Source: Chara braunii
Lineage: Eukaryota; Plantae; Charophyceae
Assembly: GCA_003427395.1 (NCBI GenBank)
Contig: BFEA01000001.1
Coordinates: 13,528,967 to 13,592,966, forward strand
Reading direction: 5' to 3'
DNA: 64,000 bases
The notes below the pieces were generated by a model. That model was not told where the DNA came from. It saw only the letters and a list, made by a program, of their open reading frames with translations, and searched no databases. The position numbers and the translations under genes were made by a program. The first letter of the stretch is position 1; every line of letters starts with the position of its first letter. Below are positions 13,619 through 30,600 of this stretch, in pieces.

Positions 13619-14774
13619 TATTCTCAATGACTTTCCTGGATGTATCCGCCTGCAACTACAAGTTGGGGTGCCTCCGGCCACAATGGCATCCCAAGCTGAG
13701 TCAAAAAATGTTATAGTGTGAGTATGTCCTAAGGCCTTTCCGTCACTTGTTCATCTCTCCGTTGGCCTGCCAGAAATTAAAATTGCACACACGGAAACGA
13801 AACAAAATGCAACAAAAGAAAAAACCTCCCTTGCATCTGTTTCTTGACCCGCTTGAAAAAAAAACTACACACCCATACACACCACGGAAAAACACAAACA
13901 CGTCATCCCTTGCATCCGTTTGTTGGTCTGTTTGAAAAAACAACACACCCAGAAACTAAACAAAACGCAACAAAGAAACACAACCACATCATCTGACATA
14001 CCTTCTTTCACTTCTGTTTCGTCTTTTTCGTGTAGTGGATAAAACCACAGAGATAGCAAGGGTATGATAAATCACGCCGCATCAGGAGTATGTTTTACAT
14101 GAAACGCACAAGTTTGCATTGGACGGGTCCCGCAAGAGCACGAACATAAAAACGTGGCTCCCATCCAGGTGTTCGAGAATTGCCTGAGAGAGCAAGCGAT
14201 GGCCACCCAGATTCACTTGAAGGGCTATATCTGCACGAGAATTGCCACTCCCAGGCTAAAAGGGTAATTTGCAGGCGATAAGCTTCTTATCGCCGGGAAC
14301 CACACACCTTTCATCCACACACCTTTCATCCACACACCTTTCATCCACACACCTTTCATTCATTTTTATTTTCCGTTTTCTTTTTCTGGGGAAGATGAGC
14401 TCAAAAGGTTGCCATAGTTGAAGTATTTTTTTTTCCGCCCCCTCCCGGAGTCCCTGAACTGCTTGCTCTTCTAATACAACAACGCATTTAGTTTTTTTTC
14501 ATTTCACTTTCAACGTCCAAAGCGGCATTTCCTGAGCCAAGCAGACCAACGGCAACATCACATCACCAGCGTTCCACCATGAGACACTTCCGTCGTCACA
14601 ACTCACTCGAACCGGCGAAAGTGTGTTCAAATCTCCTGTCATTTGTGTGCAAATAAAGGATAGTTTTTCTATACGTAAAACAAGAAAAGGTTTAGCGAAA
14701 ACAAAACAAATAAAAATCCACAAAAAAAACAAATTCTTGATTTCTGCATAAGCAAATTCAATAGGTATGCCCTT

Positions 14775-14980
14775 GACCTTCGCAGATCCATATCATGTAC
14801 ACTTTTGACAGATGTAGTGTCCTAAATCTAGGCTAGAAATTCCATACCCTTTACCTTCGCAGATCCATATNGTAGTGTCCTAAATCTAGGCTAGAAATTC
14901 CATACCCTTTACCTTCGCAGATCCATATCATGTACACTTTTGACAGATGTAGTGTCCTAAATCTAGACTAGAAATTCCAC
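14775..14980. repeat. ~75-bp tandem repeat spanning an N (possible assembly gap duplication)
   Basis: ACCTTCGCAGATCCATAT...GTAGTGTCCTAAATCTAG.CTAGAAATTCCA x3, with an N at 14871. Confidence 0.8.
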
Positions 14981-15587
14981 TGTCCTCTATCTCACTCCAG
15001 TGAACCGGTTCTAAAAGCATTCCACCAGTTCAGCTGTGGCTACTTTCACCGCTTCACGCCTAATTCACCGCCTACGTGTGCTCAAAATTCCATAGATAAG
15101 TAACATGACAGTGACATTTATAAGAAAGATTTCTGGAAAGATGGCTAAAAAATCTTTGTCAAACATGGAGGTACACAATATAGCAATCACAGGAAAGAGT
15201 AAATAATATAGCAATCACACGAAAGAGTAAATAATATAGCAATCACAGTCAGGAGCATACATGAAATAGAGAGTAGCTTCTGGAAACATTGGTATTGAAA
15301 GGTCCAAGAAACAGACAGTGCGTCACCACCACAACCTGCTAGGATCTTCTCATCCTTCCTCCACGGAAAAAGAAAATAGATAGCATCACGGATTCACCGC
15401 ATGACAAAATCAGTACTACACATACCTGCATAAGCAATGTTCAATCAGCAGGAAACCACAGAAAAGTACGGCCACTCGCCCTAGCCAGCGACCGCAGAGC
15501 TGTTTGGGGCCCTCAGAAACTTTACGCAACCCATCTCATACAATTTTCCACGTAAAGAGTATGCATTTTTAGAGTATATATATATAT

Positions 15588-16055
15588 CGTCACAAACAGA
15601 ACTGCCCGGTAAACCGTTGGCAGAGAGAGAGAAGAGGACAACAAACGAGGGGCTGTGACAAACTGTTTCGTCGGAGTTTCACCGACTCATCAGGAGGCTG
15701 AACCCTCAACAGTCTGCAGAATCCCCTCACTGATTACACTGTAAATGATAATCTACCCTAACCAAAATCAAAGTAGACTGTCACTCACCCACACCAGATG
15801 GAAAACTCTACAGACTGTCGGTTCACACCCCATCACAAGCCAGCAAAACATCCACGAAACAAAGAAAGGTCTGTCACAGCCAAAAAATACACTCCAGACA
15901 CGCCGCTGGCACTAGAGGCACAGCATGGCCGCCTAGTATATATATCGTCAAATAGAACTGCCTACGGTAAACCGTAGGCAGAGAGGGAGAAGAGGACAAC
16001 AAACGAGGGGCTGTGACAAACTGTTTCGTCGGAGTTTCACCGACTCATCAGGGGG
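15588..16055 (-). mobile_element. Hammerhead-bearing non-autonomous retroelement (retrozyme/Penelope-like), 1.3 tandem units of ~358 nt in (TA)n
   Basis: Direct repeat 15588-15693 vs 15946-16055. (TA)n at both ends and at the internal junction. Intact type III hammerhead; no ORF in the supplied track. Confidence 0.8.
15659..15716 (-). ncRNA. Type III hammerhead ribozyme (intact core)
   Basis: Minus strand: CAGACUG-UU^-GAGG(GUUCAG)CCUC-CUGAUGA-GUCGG(UGAAACU)CCGAC-GAAA-CAGUUUG. All three stems pair. Predicted cleavage is after GUU, between 15708 and 15707. Confidence 0.9.
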
Positions 16056-16969
16056 TATATATATAGTATGCATTTATTGAAATAGTTAATAGTTATTTAA
16101 TAGTTATTTCTTTGCCCGATATCATACAGTTACAATGCTGGCAAGTCTCATCGAGTGTCTCCAACCACTCTGGTCAGACCTCTACGAAGAAATATGGTGG
16201 TAGACATGCTAATTGTACACAATTTCCCAAAGCTAATATATAAGTAAATCTTCTAGATGCTGTGTGATGTTGGGGTTGGGTGGATCCAGCATACCAGCGT
16301 ACTAGGGCACCCTTCTGCTGGTCACATAAGAAAGGAGGAATCGTCTGAAGCATTGCAAAACCAAAATTATCGCCCACTATTGGTCTTGAAGTAGGACCGA
16401 TCTACTGAAGGTGAGAGGGAGGCCCATTAGACAGGTCCAGTCTATTGGTGGGCAGCTTCACCTGCCGGGAAACTGGCCCAGCGTCCCATGTGCAATATTG
16501 GAGGGATTCAGGTTTCAGATCCCCACCCTTCTTCCTAGTTACATGTACCCTTTTGTTGCTTGTGGCTCCCTGCTTTCTTGACCTCCTGATAGCAACTTCC
16601 ATCCTCTCCACCCTGGGTGAGACTTGGGCTGCCTAAGTTAGACCGGGCATGCACAGGCTGCTCAGTTAGAACTTAGTAGGGCCATCGAACCCCGACTCAC
16701 CTACTGGGGATTGTTACTTCTTGCTTGGTGGTCCTGTAGGTTTGTTGATGGGTTTATTCATATTAGCCCTCGATCTCTAACTACAGGGGCATGTTCCTTA
16801 TTACATGATTGTCTTGTTGGTTTGCTGGTGGGCTTATATTTCCATTAGCCCTTGATCTCTTGTCACCAAGAGTTCTACCATATACCAACCCAGCTCAGAT
16901 ATCTCTTCGTCACACTCAAAATTGCTTGGACAATTCCTTCGTCACTCGACATATACCTTGATTGACTCG

Positions 16970-17420
16970 AGGATCAGACATTCAACAAACTACCATCCAA
17001 GGCACCATCATGTTGGCTTATGCAAGTGCACACTGACACACTCCCGAGTATTCACACACGTACATATGAGATGTTGAACAAACTACCAACGTCGGTGGGG
17101 CATCACACTGGCTTCACATATGAGATGCACAAATCAGACAGACGCTCAACAAACTACCATCCAAAGCCACATGACCTGGCCCTGAGTACGCACACCAGTA
17201 CATATGTGACGTTTGACAAACTGCTAACTCAGGTGGCATCGCGTTCGCTTCACACATGAGATGTACATATCAGATGTTCAACAAACTACTGCATGACGTT
17301 GGCTTACGCATGCGCAAGCACATACTCCCAACGTATGCACACAAGTACATACGAGAGGTTAAAAAAACTACCCAACCTTGGCAGCAACACTTTCACTTAC
17401 ACATGCGGTACATACTGAGC
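16970..17420. repeat. Degenerate tandem array of AACAAACTACC modules (alternating two-unit pattern)
   Basis: About six GA.GTT.AACAAACTAC... units, alternately followed by GGCTTA.GCA..GCAC or GCTTCACA.ATGAGATG. Confidence 0.6.
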
Positions 17421-24600: not shown

Positions 24601-27600
24601 CTGCTGTGATCCGAAGTGATTTCCAAAAGTGCATGTGCAGTGTGAACGTCTGGTCGAAGGCTGGATCCGTGTGCTAACTCTGTTGGCTCATGGCTGCGAC
24701 CTACTACTAACATGCAAAGTGCTAACTCTGTTGGCTGTGTGTGCGTGGCTGCAACCTACTACTAACGTGCATGTGCAGTGCTAACTCTGTTGGCTGTGTG
24801 TGCATGGCCTCTGTCCTGCTGCGACCTACTAACGTGCATGTGCAGTGTGAACGTGTGGTCCGAGGCTGGGTCCATGTGCTAACTCTGTTGGCTCTGTGTG
24901 TGGCTGTGCCTCCGACAGAGATAGACGTCGAGAGGCAGGATGGAAATTAGCAGCAGGAGTAGGATATGCAGGGCGGGGTAGTCTGGAGCTCAGGGACAAA
25001 AGTAGAATTGGCAAAGACCTGGTAGGATTTTTTGACAACTTTCGTAGGCCCTGAGAACTGGTAAGGCTTAATGGGTACTTGTGGCATTCTGAGCCACACG
25101 GACCCCAGTTAGAGCCAACAAATAGGCAGGGTAGGCCTAAGGGACGACGGTTCAGATGAGGCCCAGATAGGCCAGGACCACGGCGGTTCAGGCAGGCCAG
25201 TGGTAGAGGCACAGGCCAACAGCCACAAGGCCGGTACCGCTCCAGCATAGGACCTACCGACGGCGCTGCAGAGGCTGCCGCATTTAGGCGCCAAATCCAG
25301 TTCGAATCTGGACCGTCGATTCAGATCAACCGTCCAGGCCGATAGGTACCAGCAGGTAGGAGGCCGGCCCAGCACTACAAAAGGCTGGGTACCAGCCTCA
25401 GTAGAGGTTAGAAGTTAGTACGGTTGGGTTAGTCTTCAGGATTAGCGCAGCGTTCCAGCGTTAGTACGATTAGCGCAGCGCTGCAGCATAGCGAGGAGCA
25501 GCGACGAGAGCAGGAGTTCAGCGGCAAGAGGATCAGCGCAGCGTTGGGCACAGCGCCAGTTGCCGGCCCAGCCCCCCTTGCAGCACCATAGCTACCGTGG
25601 CAGGTCTTCCTCCCTCTTCTTCCTCCACCGCTCTCTCTCTCTCTCTCTCTCTCCTCCTACCTTCTCAGTCTAAGGCTACTTCTGGGTTCTCGTACGGGAC
25701 TACTATGAGTATGAAAGATGGTTACGAATCCTGACGACATTGGAGACAGCAACATTGGGACTATAGGTTGACTACTTGTGGGATCTGATTTCATCTGCCT
25801 CTGGAGATGTATTTGACATTGTGAGATCGATATCTGAGACATTGTGGGACACTGTATTCGCAACATTTCGGATTCTCACCATCTCTGGCATTTCAAGATA
25901 CTATCTTGGAAACATCAAGTTGACGTCATCTTCCCTCTCCTCCTCCCTTCGTCTCTCTCCTCCCTCCATTCGTCCGTGGATGTTCTCAGACCCTGGCCTT
26001 TCGTCTGTGTCCAAGGCCAGGGCTTTCGCACCCCGATGAATGATTGAGAGTGTTCGATTGCAGTCCGAGTCAGGTCAGAGTCAGTCCATGTATCTCAAGA
26101 CTTCCGCTGTGATTGTATTTACTCTGCATTATCTGGTTGGTTCTGGGAATCTGCGCCATACTTATGACTGTGTTTCACGCGTATGCAACAGCACTCCAGT
26201 AGTCGCCAAAACGAGACGTGATTGCCCGCACCTAGTAGGGTACTAGGCTAGATACAGACCCTGAGGCCAAGTTGCAGGCTGAAATGGTGTTCCCTCCAAG
26301 AGGGACCTGGCGGGCCTCGTGCACCTAAGAGAGGCCGGGTAGTGCTGGGTGGCACCCGGCCAGAAGGTACCAGAGGCCAGGCAGCCGAAGTACATGAGAG
26401 AGCGTAGCGTGTACAATAGTACACTTCGGTTCAAACTTGCGCTTTATGCCGCTCCAACCACAGGGTGATGTTGGCAGAATACTTGAGGTGAGCTGGGGGG
26501 TGATGGTGAAGACCTCCGTCGCTATGGAGAATTGATCGAGAAGTGGTAGAGGTAGGCCTACGGAGGTGAGGGTGATGGACCTCTAGCCGGCTATGGTGGA
26601 CCATTAAAGGCAGGGGGAAGAAGGAGATGGGAACCGGGAAGGACACTAACCTTCAGACCATCTTCAGTCCCTTGCTTGGTGCTGCATCTAAAAGGCCCCT
26701 AACCAGGTACCAGCTAAGCTGGGACTTCATCCGAGAGTTTGGCAATGGCAGGTGGGGACTGGAGAGGCTGAGTAGAGTTTGCGTTGTCCTTTGACCATCC
26801 GTGATGCACATGGACGATCCGCCATTTACCTACCAAGGGCAGGCCAGTGAGGTTATGGCCGAAAGGAGGGCTCTTGTGTGTGCTGGCAGTAACGGGGAGT
26901 ACTTGCTGTCTAAGACAATGATGATGATGAGGGGGACGAGGGAGAGATGACATTGTTTTCCACTTGTGTTTATCTTCCTCTTCTATTGTTCATTCCCTCT
27001 TGTCATACTTCTGCTCTCAATCACTTCCATTTAAGTTGCAACGGAATGGCATTCTCTTTGTGAGCTCTTGCACTGGGAGATGACCAAGGATCATAGCAAT
27101 CGTTGCGACGATATCACTTACAGCGAGTGGAACAAGAAGAGGCCCGTATGACGAGCCAACCGATGCATCTGTCACCCCCACGAATCTTGAAGACAGACCA
27201 ACTTCCAACAATGGGTCCAAAGCTTGACTTTGAATAAATCCACTCAAAGTCAATGCTCTCTCCAAACCCTCCTTCGATTGCAAGCTGCCAGCCAGTGTCC
27301 CTAATCTCTGACAACAGTCATATGGTAGAGCACACACGACCAGCAATACATACACAGCCACACCAATCATCAATAAGACTGCTGCAGTCAGAAAGTCCTT
27401 GTACAGTCATGTATATAACACACACGACCAGCAATACATACACAGCCACACCAATCATCAATAAGACTGCTGCAGTCAGAAAGTCCTTGTACAGTCATGT
27501 ATATAAATACGTACATACTTGTATATCTAAAAATACGTCAAACAGAACTGACCGCTAAACCATTGGCAGAGAGGGAGAAGAGAACAACAAACGCAGGGCC

Positions 27601-30600
27601 ATAACAGAACTGCCCGGTAAATAGTAGGCAGAGAGGGAAAAGAGGAGGACAACAAACGAGGGGCTGTGACAGACTGTTTCATCGGAGTTTCACCGACTCA
27701 TCAGGATGTCGAACCCTCTGCAGTCTGCATAGTCCCCTAACCGGTGAGGCTGAACACACTACAGTCTGCAGTCCCCTAACTGATGATACTGATAAAAGCA
27801 TCAACGACTGCCTGTCAATTGCCACCCTGAGGTGGGAACCAACCACTGCGCTACCCTAAGGTGGGCACCAACCACTACCCTCAAGGTACCTGAGACGGAA
27901 ATCAAAGCAGACTATCGCTCACCGGCACCAGAAGGAAAACTCTACAGACTGCAGGTTCACACCCCATCATAACATAGCAAAACAGTGAAAACACCCACGA
28001 AACGGAGGTCAGTCACAGCCAGAAAATACACTCCAGACACACCGCTGGCACTAGATGCACAACACGACATGACCGCAGATTGATGGCCCCGATCGCTGCC
28101 GTTCCACCTGACCGGAGAAACCATAGCAGGGAGCTATCAAAGTCCAGAACTTTCTTCTTTCCGATCATCCATGTCCAAAGCAAGAAAGACGACTCACATC
28201 ATGTCAACCACAAATCCAGGTCCATGAATATATTCACTTACCTAAAACTACAATCATCATAGAAGCACATCACCTAGACATATCCTCTCTATGGAAAGCA
28301 GCACTATATAATGATGGAAATGCTCTCCCAACTTACAAACAAGCCATCTTTATATCGCATTTTCCCATTACTTTTCTCAATTAAAAATTTGGACCATTTC
28401 TCGATTTATGTATGTCATCCTTGGCGCAGCGGCCATGCTGATCTTCTCTCTCTGTATCGTTCCGATTTTAACGGATTTACCCAAGGACAGTTTCCCATTA
28501 CTATCTGTCCTGGTATCTGCTAATAACATATAGCCTGTTGCTTGCTATATTGCTGTTTTCCTTGTTTACTATCCTAGTTTGACTTCTCGTTGGCTGTTTT
28601 AGTCTTTTGGTATACTGTAGTTTTCCTCGTCCCTTGACATTCTAGTATGCTTTGGCACTGCCTTACTACTACCGTCTTCCCCCGAACATAACGCACCCTG
28701 ATAATGAATGTACACGAAACGTTTTCGGTCTGGTACAGCCATAAAGAGGGTGCATTGTGGTCGGGGGAAGAAGGTAGATTCTGCAGCTTTGCCTTGGAGC
28801 TCACCTTAGCGCTCAGCTCAGCATACGGGTCCACGCCGTAATGCTGGACAATACTCTCGAGGAAACAGTCCTGATATCCGATTGCCACTTGCTACAAACC
28901 TCTCCGGGAACAGACTGAACAAGAGCAGCTGGGCATTGCTCGTCTTGGGGCCATTTTCTATGTCCAGCTGATGTCTTATAGACACGAGGCAAATTTCGGA
29001 CGAGGGGACAGTTGGGGAAAGTGCACTGAGGATCACTTACGTGACAGGTGCTTCGATTGAAATTGGAAATTCCATCTTTTCTTGGGGTTCAGAGGGAGGG
29101 GGGAGGTTTGGGGGGGGGGAGGGGAGGGAGGAGGCGGGGAATGCAAGAAAAATGAAAGTGACGACATAGGCCAGAAACAGGTTGGAGATGGCTCTCATCC
29201 GGCCAGCAAGTCTCACGCTAAAGAAAAATTGCCTATTTTTGACAAATCTTCTCTCCCTTACAAATACGAAACGAGGTCATCCATCAAACATGCGTTCGTA
29301 CTTTGGGTATTCACAAAAAAAACGAATTTTGCAAGACCATCACCGTCATTGTGTTAATGTGTGGATTCCCTAATTGGAGCCACAAAAGATGTCAACAGGA
29401 GCTAGTGCCAGTGCAAGCCATTCGAAGTAGGAATAACTCAGGGCATACTCACACGGGGACCAAATGAACCAAAATCCCAAAATTTGAGGCATTTTTGTGG
29501 TCACACGGGGTTGGCCCTGTACCCAAATGCCTCAAATCGTGACCAAATGTCAGCGGCCTGCGAGGCCGCGGGGGTACCCTTTTTGAGACCACCTCCAGAG
29601 GTGGTCTCAAATGACCAAACGCTTTTTTCGTTTCCTTTCCTCAATTTGTAGAAAATCGTAGAAGAATAAGACAACCAGCCGAAGTTGTTTTTCTTTTCTT
29701 TTTTCTTTTTTTTCTTCTTCTTTTCTTTGGTGTCCCCTCGTGTGACCACACGACCTTGCCCTGAGTGCAAAGTGTCAGGGCTTATACACATCTAGATGTG
29801 TATAAGAGACAGCATTAGCGACCGCTACAGTACAAAGCAGATGAATCCAGAAAACCAGAAGACCGACTGTAAAATTGGAAAGATACAGAGAAGATTAGCA
29901 TGGCCCCTGCCCAAGGATGACACGCATAAATCGAGAAGGAAAGATTGAACCAACACGACAATTGAACCAACACGAAAACCAGAAAAGATCGACTGACGAC
30001 AAATCCGAAGGAAATGATTGCGCCCGCTACAGTACAAAGGAGATGAATCGAGAAAACAAAAAGACCGACTAAAACGAAACCAGAAGGAAATCATTGAACC
30101 AACACGAAAACCAGAAAAGATCGACTGACGACAAATCAGAAGGAAATGATTGAACCAACACAATAATTGAACCGACGCCGAAAAGGAGATCGTTTGGCAA
30201 ACCATGGTCGGAGCGTTTAACTAGATGAAAAAGACAAAGAGAAAAGGGTGGGGTGCTTGCATCGCGCCAGCTGATTGACCCAGTGGGCCTCAAGTCCATA
30301 CATTATGCATGGCCCGCAGAAATTTCCGCCGGCCGCCCAGTGGATGAAAAATTCAGGGGCTCCAAAAAAAAAAAAAAAAAAAAAAACAATTCACGGGCAA
30401 GGCGCGCGCGATTCCATCGCAGGCCTGTCTCACGGTGCTACCGTCGACACCAGCCGATGCTGAGGCACGGAATGGGGAGGACATGAACGGCTGCAAGCCG
30501 CAGCTGGGCATTTTGTAGGGATAGCTGCGCCCCCAATCCACCCCTCTAGAAAACGGCTCCTCGGAGTCGCTACTTCCGCTGGGAGAGAAAGAAATCTCGA

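What the first reader, a model, noticed from the sequence alone, without database searches (positions are those of the whole stretch)
15651..15881. Built-in 'anti-ribozyme' mirror gives a viroid-like rod fold that could switch the hammerhead off
Seen: three collinear complementary blocks pair most of the ribozyme with a segment ~100-200 nt away. They are GGCTGTGACA (15651-60) with TGTCACAGCC (15872-81), TGTTTCGT (15664-71) with ACGAAACA (15854-61), and TGAACC..ACAGTCTGCAGA (15699-720) with TCTACAGACTGT.GGTTCA (15807-25). The same blocks persist in the 27.6-kb copy, including a U-A to C-G compensatory change at the cleavage triplet. Read on the plus strand, the mirror looks like a vestigial opposite-polarity hammerhead (CAGACTGTC, GGT-TCAC-ACC, ...CGAAACA) lacking CUGAUGA. 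Established: viroid and retrozyme circles are protected from re-cleavage by alternative folds that sequester the hammerhead. Inference: this is a two-state RNA, possibly descended from an ambisense double-hammerhead replicon.
Basis: partly seen in the sequence, partly recalled or inferred. Interest (0 to 1): 0.8.

Follow-up and report, generated by a model that had tools for sequence, protein, structure and literature searches.

The report
Wobble-rich antisense lock on algal hammerhead
A short non-coding jumping element of a (reportedly Chara) alga carries a self-cutting hammerhead RNA and, just upstream on the same RNA, a G-U-rich mirror copy that zips it into a 97-base-pair rod and should keep it from cutting. 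This design is already described for plant retrozymes and viroids, but here it sits in a different kind of element.

Summary
The three blocks are exact. The whole stretch 15651-15881 folds on the minus (ribozyme-sense) strand into a 97-bp rod: -124.2 kcal/mol, z = -12.5, against -64.1 for the plus strand. The two arms differ by 22 G-U-type mismatches and only 1 A-C-type (p = 6e-6). That means a strand-specific RNA structure, not a neutral DNA palindrome.

The hammerhead alone folds correctly. Next to the mirror its active fold is 39-44 kcal/mol worse. Because the mirror lies 5' of the ribozyme, the modelled nascent RNA never shows the active fold.

The 27.6-kb copy keeps the rod, with two adjacent compensatory pairs, although its ribozyme is dead. 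RNA reads show that the family is transcribed mainly in ribozyme sense and that its consensus pairs even better.

The lock and the "quasi-hammerhead in the opposite polarity" are both published for plant retrozymes and viroids (PMC5680766). This scan also reported the same design on another copy in this genome. New here are the host element (non-LTR, Penelope-like, (TA)n-targeted, type III hammerhead) and the 5' position of the lock.

Not supported: descent from an ambisense double-hammerhead replicon, a reachable second (active) state, and a circle from this locus. Family-wide covariation could not be run.

The parts
15651..15881 (-). Whole rod hairpin of the element's sense RNA (97 bp, 22 G-U pairs)
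   Evidence: MFE -124.2 kcal/mol, z -12.5; pair list; plus strand only -64.1
15660..15715 (-). Type III hammerhead ribozyme: helix I 4 bp with a 6-nt loop, helix II 5 bp with a 7-nt loop, helix III 7-9 bp, intact core, GUU triplet
   Evidence: RF00008 45.8 bits, E 3e-8; the isolated 70-nt stretch folds as a hammerhead
15707..15708 (-). Predicted self-cleavage site (between 15708 and 15707 on the minus strand). Read variants at position 17 are U, C and A, never G
   Evidence: Rfam alignment; variant table
15807..15881 (-). Mirror arm (antisense lock), transcribed before the ribozyme. Pairs with helix III 5' strand and cut site, helix I, core, helix II, CGAAAC and the 3' flank
   Evidence: mirror plus hammerhead duplex -88.7 against -38.2 kcal/mol for the two folded apart
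15721..15806 (-). Apical part of the rod, not ribozyme-related. It is the most polymorphic part and carries a ~128-nt insertion in the 27.6-kb copy
15574..15650 (-). 3' tail of the element ending in (TA)n. Together with 15651-15707 it forms the ~127-nt part that is 10-20 times more abundant in reads
   Evidence: depth table
15882..15938 (-). 5' remainder of this copy. The family consensus runs on beyond 15937, so the copy is 5'-truncated at a (TA)n junction
   Evidence: loose ends at 15937/15938 match 28079-28110 of the 27.6-kb copy
15940..16053 (-). Upstream 5'-truncated copy in a partial-tandem, pseudo-LTR-like arrangement. Its hammerhead lacks helix I and the cut site
   Evidence: (22.2 bits only)
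27662..28020 (-). Second copy of the rod. Its ribozyme is probably dead (C at 16.1, G-U at 10.1/11.1), the 5' half of the hammerhead is duplicated, and the apex carries an insertion

Best explanation
The stretch is the structured core of a short, non-coding, Penelope-like (non-LTR) retroelement that inserts in (TA)n.

Its sense RNA (window minus strand) carries a canonical type III hammerhead. About 90-220 nt upstream on the same RNA lies an inverted, wobble-rich copy of that hammerhead. The two zip into a 97-bp rod in which the substrate strand, helix I, the catalytic core, helix II and the CGAAAC box are all paired to the mirror.

The substrate strand (15717-15709) therefore has two near-identical rival partners: the helix III 3' strand (15666-15658) and the mirror (15818-15810). 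The mirror wins by about 40 kcal/mol. It is also transcribed first, so the ribozyme is held off in any RNA that contains both.

Shown here: the rod, its strand specificity, its persistence in a second copy and in the transcribed family, and the energy gap.

Inferred: the lock is kept by selection on the RNA. Its benefit would be to protect full-length (or circularised) RNA from self-cleavage, so that complete copies and not only the 3' cleavage product can be reverse-transcribed. G-U pairs rather than perfect pairs keep the fold one-stranded and avoid a perfect DNA palindrome or perfect dsRNA.
For: - The rod is far beyond chance and is strand-specific: -124.2 kcal/mol (z -12.5) against -64.1 for the plus strand.
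- The arms differ by 22 G-U-type and 1 A-C-type transition mismatches, binomial p = 5.7e-6. The second copy gives 8 to 0.
- The hammerhead alone folds correctly (-22.7 MFE against -21.4 with the hammerhead enforced). With the mirror present, the enforced hammerhead fold costs +43.7 (231 nt), +39.0 (358 nt) and +38.6 (circle) kcal/mol.
- Nascent-chain folding gives P(hammerhead helices) = 0.000 and P(rod) >= 0.99 at every length. A transcript that starts at the apex, without the mirror, folds the hammerhead.
- Between the two copies, 63 pairs are unchanged, 7 are kept by a one-sided change, 2 by two-sided compensatory changes and 8 are broken. The compensatory pair at 15818/15709 keeps the rod while destroying the essential A15.1-U16.1 pair of the ribozyme.
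- Of the 10 family variants in RNA reads that are transitions at rod positions, 9 keep or create a pair on the minus strand. The two letters that nearly all reads show (15758T, 15780A) improve the rod to -128.9 kcal/mol.
- Reads lie mostly in ribozyme sense: first mate on + is 4-8 times first mate on -.
- The same lock is described for plant retrozymes and viroids (PMC5680766).
Against: - Only two copies holding both arms could be compared, and the second is decayed. No family-wide covariation test was possible.
- Concerted changes in an inverted repeat can arise by template switching, without selection.
- A strand-biased RNA-level mutation process (A>G, C>U) would give the same wobble asymmetry.
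- No cleavage assay or structure probing was done.
- The oligo-dT RNA libraries show no pile of ends at the cut site, so neither cleavage nor its suppression is shown in vivo.
- Most family copies start at or just 3' of the cut site (10-20-fold depth step at 15703-15707). If that reflects cleavage, the lock is leaky or is opened in vivo.
- The energy model ignores proteins, helicases and folding kinetics.
Confidence: 0.6

Rival explanations
1. The rod is selected, but for something other than controlling the ribozyme. Candidates are RNA stability or retention, a block or pause signal for the reverse transcriptase, or a hairpin diced into small RNAs that silence the family. Sequestering the hammerhead would then be a side effect.
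For: - The rod extends 86 nt beyond the ribozyme-mirror part (15721-15806).
- The rod is kept in the 27.6-kb copy although its ribozyme is dead.
- The starts of truncated copies (15669-15707) all lie inside the 3' arm of the rod. They stop just before its longest uninterrupted helix (15708-15726 with 15801-15819), as a reverse-transcriptase roadblock would also predict.
- Both strands are read at about 1:1 to 2:1 over 15703-15806.
Against: - The mirror is specifically an inverted copy of the hammerhead and covers it end to end.
- Short copies without the mirror are the most abundant, so the rod is not needed for mobilisation.
- No small-RNA data could be examined.
Confidence: 0.2
2. The mirror is a neutral relic: an old head-to-head (inverted, 5'-truncated) insertion of the kind Penelope-like elements often make, fixed in the master copy and now decaying. 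It would have no function.
For: Penelope-like elements often insert with an adjacent inverted truncated copy, which gives inverted repeats (PMC8557442). The mirror read on the plus strand aligns with the whole hammerhead, core included.
Against: - Neutral decay should give G-U-type and A-C-type mismatches equally, yet 22 to 1 is seen.
- The arms do not extend to the element's 3' end, as a head-to-head pair of 5'-truncated copies would.
- The family consensus pairs better than this copy.
- The mirror arm opposite the ribozyme has only 2 variants at 8% or more in 75 nt.
Confidence: 0.15
3. The mirror is a vestigial hammerhead of the opposite polarity, and the element descends from an ambisense, viroid-like double-hammerhead RNA replicon.
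For: Read on the plus strand, the mirror has a helix III strand, a GUC triplet, a small helix I hairpin and CGAAAC in hammerhead order. In register its core reads as CUGAUGAG with three substitutions and one inserted base. Avsunviroid hammerhead arms have this layout (PMC5680766).
Against: - Any full complement of a hammerhead must look like this.
- There is no Rfam hit on the plus strand at E <= 10.
- The plus-sense helix II cannot pair, because the G-U pairs become A-C.
- No CUGAUGA appears on the plus strand in either copy or in read variants at 8% or more.
- The element is DNA-encoded, dispersed, 5'-truncated and (TA)n-targeted like a retroposon.
- The literature sees the causal arrow the other way: retrozymes offer a quasi-hammerhead from which viroid-like RNAs might arise.
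Confidence: 0.04

Closest known systems
Plant LTR retrozymes (Cervera, Urbina & de la Pena 2016; review PMC5680766)
   Same: Non-coding retroelement with a type III hammerhead. In the RNA the hammerhead sits in a long stem paired to a highly complementary sequence, said to 'most likely help to prevent self-cleavage'. That stem gives a 'quasi-HHR in the opposite polarity'. The RNA is compact and more than 70% self-paired (here 73% of the unit and 84% of the rod).
   Different: There are no LTRs carrying complete hammerheads, no tRNA-Met primer-binding site and no polypurine tract. The repeats are a 113-nt partial tandem, the insertion is in (TA)n, the unit is about 358+ nt rather than 600-1000 nt, and the host is reportedly a charophyte alga, not an angiosperm. 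A circle was not shown for this locus.
Hammerhead arm of Avsunviroidae (e.g. PLMVd, CChMVd) and viroid-like satellite RNAs
   Same: The ribozyme sequence is locked in the most stable fold by pairing with the opposite strand of a rod or arm. That opposite strand reads as a hammerhead in the other polarity.
   Different: In viroids both polarities cleave and the RNA replicates RNA-to-RNA. Here only one polarity has a ribozyme, the other is dead in core and helix II, and the element is genomic DNA.
Hepatitis delta virus rod and 'attenuator' control of its ribozymes (Lazinski & Taylor 1995; from my own knowledge, not read here)
   Same: A distant complementary segment across a rod suppresses a self-cleaving ribozyme, so cleavage depends on folding order.
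   Different: The ribozyme class is different, and HDV is an infectious RNA with a coding region.
Chlamys Penelope-like elements of Chara braunii with canonical hammerheads (Craig et al. 2021, PMC8557442), and animal non-LTR retrozymes as non-autonomous derivatives of Penelope-like elements (bioRxiv 10.64898/2026.07.22.740005)
   Same: Frequent 5' truncation, partial tandems (pseudo-LTRs), microsatellite targets and a hammerhead near the terminus. A non-autonomous element is derived from a terminal sequence.
   Different: There is no ORF here. The published scheme pairs non-LTR retrozymes with type I hammerheads in animals, whereas this is a type III hammerhead. Those papers do not describe an antisense lock, as far as my term searches of them showed.

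Membership tests
Hammerhead ribozyme, type III (Rfam RF00008) | Conserved core (CUGAUGA, GAAA), A15.1-U16.1 pair, NUH triplet | tested here: met
   All core positions are present and the triplet is GUU. Family variants at position 17 are C and A, never G.
Hammerhead ribozyme, type III (Rfam RF00008) | Helices I and II closed by loops, helix III open; score at or above the family's gathering score | tested here: inconclusive
   The topology is met. The score of 45.8 bits is just under the gathering score of 48.5, with E = 3e-8.
Hammerhead ribozyme, type III (Rfam RF00008) | Self-cleavage at the predicted site | not testable with these tools
   No pile of RNA ends at 15707/15708 in two oligo-dT libraries, which is not decisive.
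Plant LTR retrozyme | Two LTRs, each with a complete hammerhead | tested here: not met
   The upstream repeat is 113 nt and lacks helix I and the cut site (22.2 bits).
Plant LTR retrozyme | tRNA-Met primer-binding site (tested) and polypurine tract (not searched for) | tested here: not met
   No match to the primer-binding-site motif within 2 mismatches in or near the element. I did not search for a polypurine tract.
Plant LTR retrozyme | Hammerhead paired to a complementary sequence in a long stem of a compact RNA | tested here: met
Non-LTR (animal-type) retrozyme | Tandem units each with a type I hammerhead; unit-length circular RNA | tested here: not met
   The hammerhead is type III and the tandem is only partial. 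One RNA contig from a rice-paddy library closes on itself with a period of about 426 nt. That fits a tandem or a circle and cannot tell them apart.
Penelope-like element, non-autonomous derivative | 5' truncation, partial tandem (pseudo-LTR), microsatellite target, terminal hammerhead | tested here: met
   read against the description in PMC8557442. Sequence identity to an autonomous Chlamys element was not tested.
Ambisense viroid-like replicon (Avsunviroidae type) | Functional hammerhead in both polarities | tested here: not met
   No plus-strand hit at E <= 10; no plus-strand CUGAUGA.

The most novel reading that the evidence does not exclude
The lock is an RNA-selected switch installed upstream of the ribozyme. 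The hammerhead of this Penelope-type element would then be off by default and fire only when a factor (a helicase, the element's mobilising reverse transcriptase, or an antisense RNA) peels off the mirror. That would give the long-unexplained hammerheads of Penelope-like elements a regulated role. It would also show in a streptophyte alga the 'quasi-hammerhead' intermediate from which ambisense viroid-like RNAs could arise.
Probability: 0.12. Interest if true: 0.65.

Novelty: new variant of a known kind. Interest (0 to 1): 0.35.

Why it matters
The role of hammerheads in Penelope-like elements and their non-autonomous derivatives is still open (PMC8557442). This element has an intact type III ribozyme next to a built-in inhibitor. 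Its genomic progeny are mostly the 3' fragment downstream of the cut site. That makes one question directly testable: does ribozyme cleavage help or hurt propagation, and does the lock tune it?

The design was known from angiosperm retrozymes and viroids. Finding it in a non-LTR element of a (reportedly) charophyte alga suggests either convergence or an older origin in the green lineage.

The conceptual gain is modest. The mechanism is published, and this scan has already reported it on another copy.

Tried and rejected
1. More family copies for a covariation test.
   - One metagenome scan with the 29-nt ribozyme core gave two contigs (L001, L002). They are an unrelated phage-like type III hammerhead between small ORFs with no mirror.
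   - Two scans of genome contigs and two of viral contigs, with mirror and ribozyme patterns, gave nothing.
   - blastn of the window found only the three known pieces plus one short fragment at 27521-27612.
   - An R-scape-type test was therefore not possible.
2. Plus-strand hammerhead: Rfam at E <= 1 over 14500-17000 and at E <= 10 over 15780-15900 gave nothing.
3. LTR-retrozyme primer-binding site: no match.
4. RNA ends at the cut site: none listed in two oligo-dT raw-read libraries. This is uninformative, because cleaved 5' fragments and circles are not poly(A)-selected.
5. U6 chimera idea for the 27.6-kb copy: rejected. The U6 copy at 28383-28490 has its own 12-bp target duplication.
6. 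My first shuffling script timed out. It was replaced by the tool's dinucleotide shuffles and mononucleotide shuffles.
7. Organism identity (Chara braunii) is taken from earlier scan notes and was not tested. I ran no further search on it. Pfam scans of the seven longest ORFs gave only sub-threshold hits.

Full report
**What is there**

The window is eukaryotic; it holds two U6 snRNA copies. Earlier notes of this scan name the genome as Chara braunii. I did not test that.

At 15660-15715 on the minus strand lies a type III hammerhead with a complete core: RF00008, 45.8 bits, E = 3e-8, just under the gathering score of 48.5. The predicted cut is between 15708 and 15707, at a GUU triplet.

The locus 15574-16053 is not a two-ribozyme unit. 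Read on the minus strand, it starts with a 113-nt 5'-truncated copy (16053 down to 15940). The hammerhead of that copy starts at CUGAUGAG and lacks helix I and the cut site (22.2 bits). A (TA)n junction follows, then a 358-nt copy (15938 down to 15581), then (TA)n.

RNA reads run on beyond 15937 with a consensus that matches 28079-28110 of the second copy. The 358-nt copy is therefore itself 5'-truncated.

Partial tandems, 5' truncation and microsatellite targets are the signature of Penelope-like elements. The Chlamys clade of those elements is published to carry canonical hammerheads in C. braunii (PMC8557442). I found no tRNA-Met primer-binding site. I did not search for a polypurine tract.

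**Checking the observation**

They are only the tips of the structure.

- The minus strand of 15651-15881 folds into one rod of 97 pairs (40 A-U, 35 G-C, 22 G-U), with 84% of bases paired.
- Its energy is -124.2 kcal/mol, against -67.2 +/- 4.6 for 200 dinucleotide shuffles, z = -12.5.
- The plus strand reaches only -64.1 kcal/mol, z = -5.2.
- The rod survives when the 358-nt unit is folded as a linear molecule (-159.0) or as a circle (-154.9).

**Strand specificity**

I aligned the ribozyme arm with the plus-strand reading of the mirror arm, without any folding. The result was 75 matches, 22 mismatches that are G-U on the minus-strand RNA, 1 that is A-C, and 7 transversions.

Neutral, strand-symmetric decay of an inverted repeat should give the two transition classes equally, so 22 to 1 has p = 5.7e-6. 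The second copy gives 8 to 0, although that count is not independent. The mirror arm is 69% G+U in sense orientation.

This points either to selection on the structure of the ribozyme-sense RNA or to a strand-biased RNA-level mutation process. I favour selection.

**What the mirror does to the ribozyme**

Every part of the hammerhead is paired to the mirror: the helix III 5' strand with the cut site, helix I, C3-A9 of the core (all but G5), helix II, CGAAAC and the 3' flank.

The substrate strand has two near-identical rival partners: ACAGUUUGU (helix III 3' strand, 15666-15658) and ACAGUCUGU (mirror, 15818-15810).

| RNA folded | Result |
|---|---|
| 70-nt ribozyme alone | hammerhead fold (-22.7 MFE, -21.4 enforced) |
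| 231-nt rod, hammerhead helices enforced | +43.7 kcal/mol |
| 358-nt unit, hammerhead enforced | +39.0 kcal/mol |
| 358-nt circle, hammerhead enforced | +38.6 kcal/mol |
| mirror plus ribozyme as a duplex | -88.7, against -38.2 for the two folded apart |

The mirror lies 5' of the ribozyme in the RNA. Folding the growing transcript at 14 lengths gives probability 0.000 for all three hammerhead helices and at least 0.99 for the rod pairs. A transcript that starts at the apex, without the mirror, folds the hammerhead.

So the "off" state is well supported, within the limits of an equilibrium energy model. A reachable "on" state is not.

**Conservation**

The 27.6-kb copy (27662-28020, minus) keeps the rod: -154.1 kcal/mol, z = -6.4. 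This holds despite a ~128-nt insertion at the apex and a duplicated 5' half of the hammerhead.

Of 80 comparable pairs, 63 are unchanged, 7 are kept through a one-sided change, 2 are kept through two-sided changes and 8 are broken. The two compensatory pairs are adjacent:
- 15819/15708, G-U to U-A.

The first of these puts C at position 16.1, which breaks the essential A15.1-U16.1 pair. With G-U at 10.1/11.1 as well, that ribozyme is probably dead while its rod was preserved. Template switching between the arms could produce the same pattern without selection.

**RNA reads**

Two oligo-dT raw-read libraries of the same organism label lay thousands of reads on the unit.

- The first mate lies on + 4-8 times more often than on - over most of it. 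For the usual stranded protocol this means ribozyme-sense RNA. That is an inference, because the protocol is not on record.
- About 60% of the laid reads run on into unlike sequence, so many come from copies embedded in longer transcripts.
- Depth is 10-20 times higher from 15573 to about 15702 than upstream. The steepest step is at 15703-15707, and many copy-start junctions lie at 15669-15706. The bulk of the family is therefore the roughly 100-127-nt piece 3' of the cut site, which lacks the mirror.
- That pattern fits reverse transcription of the cleaved 3' product. It equally fits reverse transcriptase stalling inside the rod just before its longest helix (15708-15726 with 15801-15819).
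- No pile of ends at the cut site is listed.

Of the 10 listed variants (8% or more) that are transitions at rod positions, 9 keep or create a pair on the minus strand. The two letters that nearly all reads show instead of this copy's (15758T, 15780A) turn a G-U and an A-C into Watson-Crick pairs and lower the energy to -128.9 kcal/mol.

The mirror opposite the ribozyme has only 2 such variants in 75 nt, and none restores CUGAUGA on the plus strand.

A 456-nt contig from a rice-paddy RNA library is 99% identical to the unit and closes on itself with a period of about 426 nt. That is compatible with a tandem or a circle.

**The 'vestigial opposite-polarity hammerhead'**

In register, the plus-strand reading of the mirror is the hammerhead with G-to-A and U-to-C changes, a few transversions and one inserted base in the core. 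Any end-to-end complement that tolerates wobble must look like that.

Rfam finds no hammerhead on that strand even at E <= 10, and its helix II cannot pair.

The mirror is best called an inverted duplicate of the ribozyme. Whether it ever cleaved cannot be told. Descent from an ambisense RNA replicon is not supported by anything I found.

**Comparison with what is known**

de la Pena and Cervera (2017, PMC5680766) state two things.

The present element fails the LTR-retrozyme tests: it has no LTRs with full ribozymes and no primer-binding site. It also fails the animal non-LTR retrozyme definition, which requires a type I hammerhead (bioRxiv 10.64898/2026.07.22.740005). It fits a non-autonomous Penelope-like element.

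Another follow-up of this scan reached the same reading on a different copy of this genome (s1-570277). The scan has therefore found this design before, on other DNA.

**Verdict**

This is a real, strongly supported, strand-specific RNA rod that should silence the ribozyme. It is a known design in a new kind of carrier, with the lock placed upstream of the ribozyme. Family-wide covariation and any wet test remain to be done.

Noticed in passing
window 28383-28490 (-) and 29845-29952 (+): Two U6 snRNA copies (68.6 and 70.8 bits). The first is flanked by a 12-bp direct repeat, TTTCCCATTACT, at 28364-28375 and 28491-28502, which suggests a retro-inserted copy. The second is followed by 60-nt repeats at 29961-30152.
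   Followed up: partly
L001:8195-8223 (-), L002:3461-3489 (+): Two metagenome contigs carry a type III hammerhead whose core plus helix II (29 nt) is identical to the algal one. It sits between small ORFs in a phage- or bacterium-like context and has no mirror. This is probably convergence on a common helix II.
   Followed up: partly
window 27700-27900: The 27.6-kb copy has a tandem duplication of the hammerhead's 5' half. The upstream duplicate keeps U16.1 with a GUA triplet. The copy also has a ~128-nt apex insertion made of two similar hairpin-forming repeats.
   Followed up: partly
window 27521-27612: A further short 3' fragment of the same element lies directly downstream (minus sense) of the 27.6-kb copy. 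This is another partial tandem.
   Followed up: no
window 15581-15937, run X18: A 456-nt contig from a rice-paddy RNA library is 99% identical to the unit and overlaps itself at both ends (period about 426 nt). Soil and freshwater metatranscriptomes also hold part of the element's words.
   Followed up: partly
window 15669-15707: The starts of truncated family copies cluster in the 45 nt just 3' of the cut site. One junction (15679 joined to 15577 through ATATG) is very common, which suggests an amplified or highly expressed tandem of short copies. Short copies starting at 15697-15702 hold a complete 'enzyme strand' of the hammerhead.
   Followed up: no
I did not look further.
   Followed up: no
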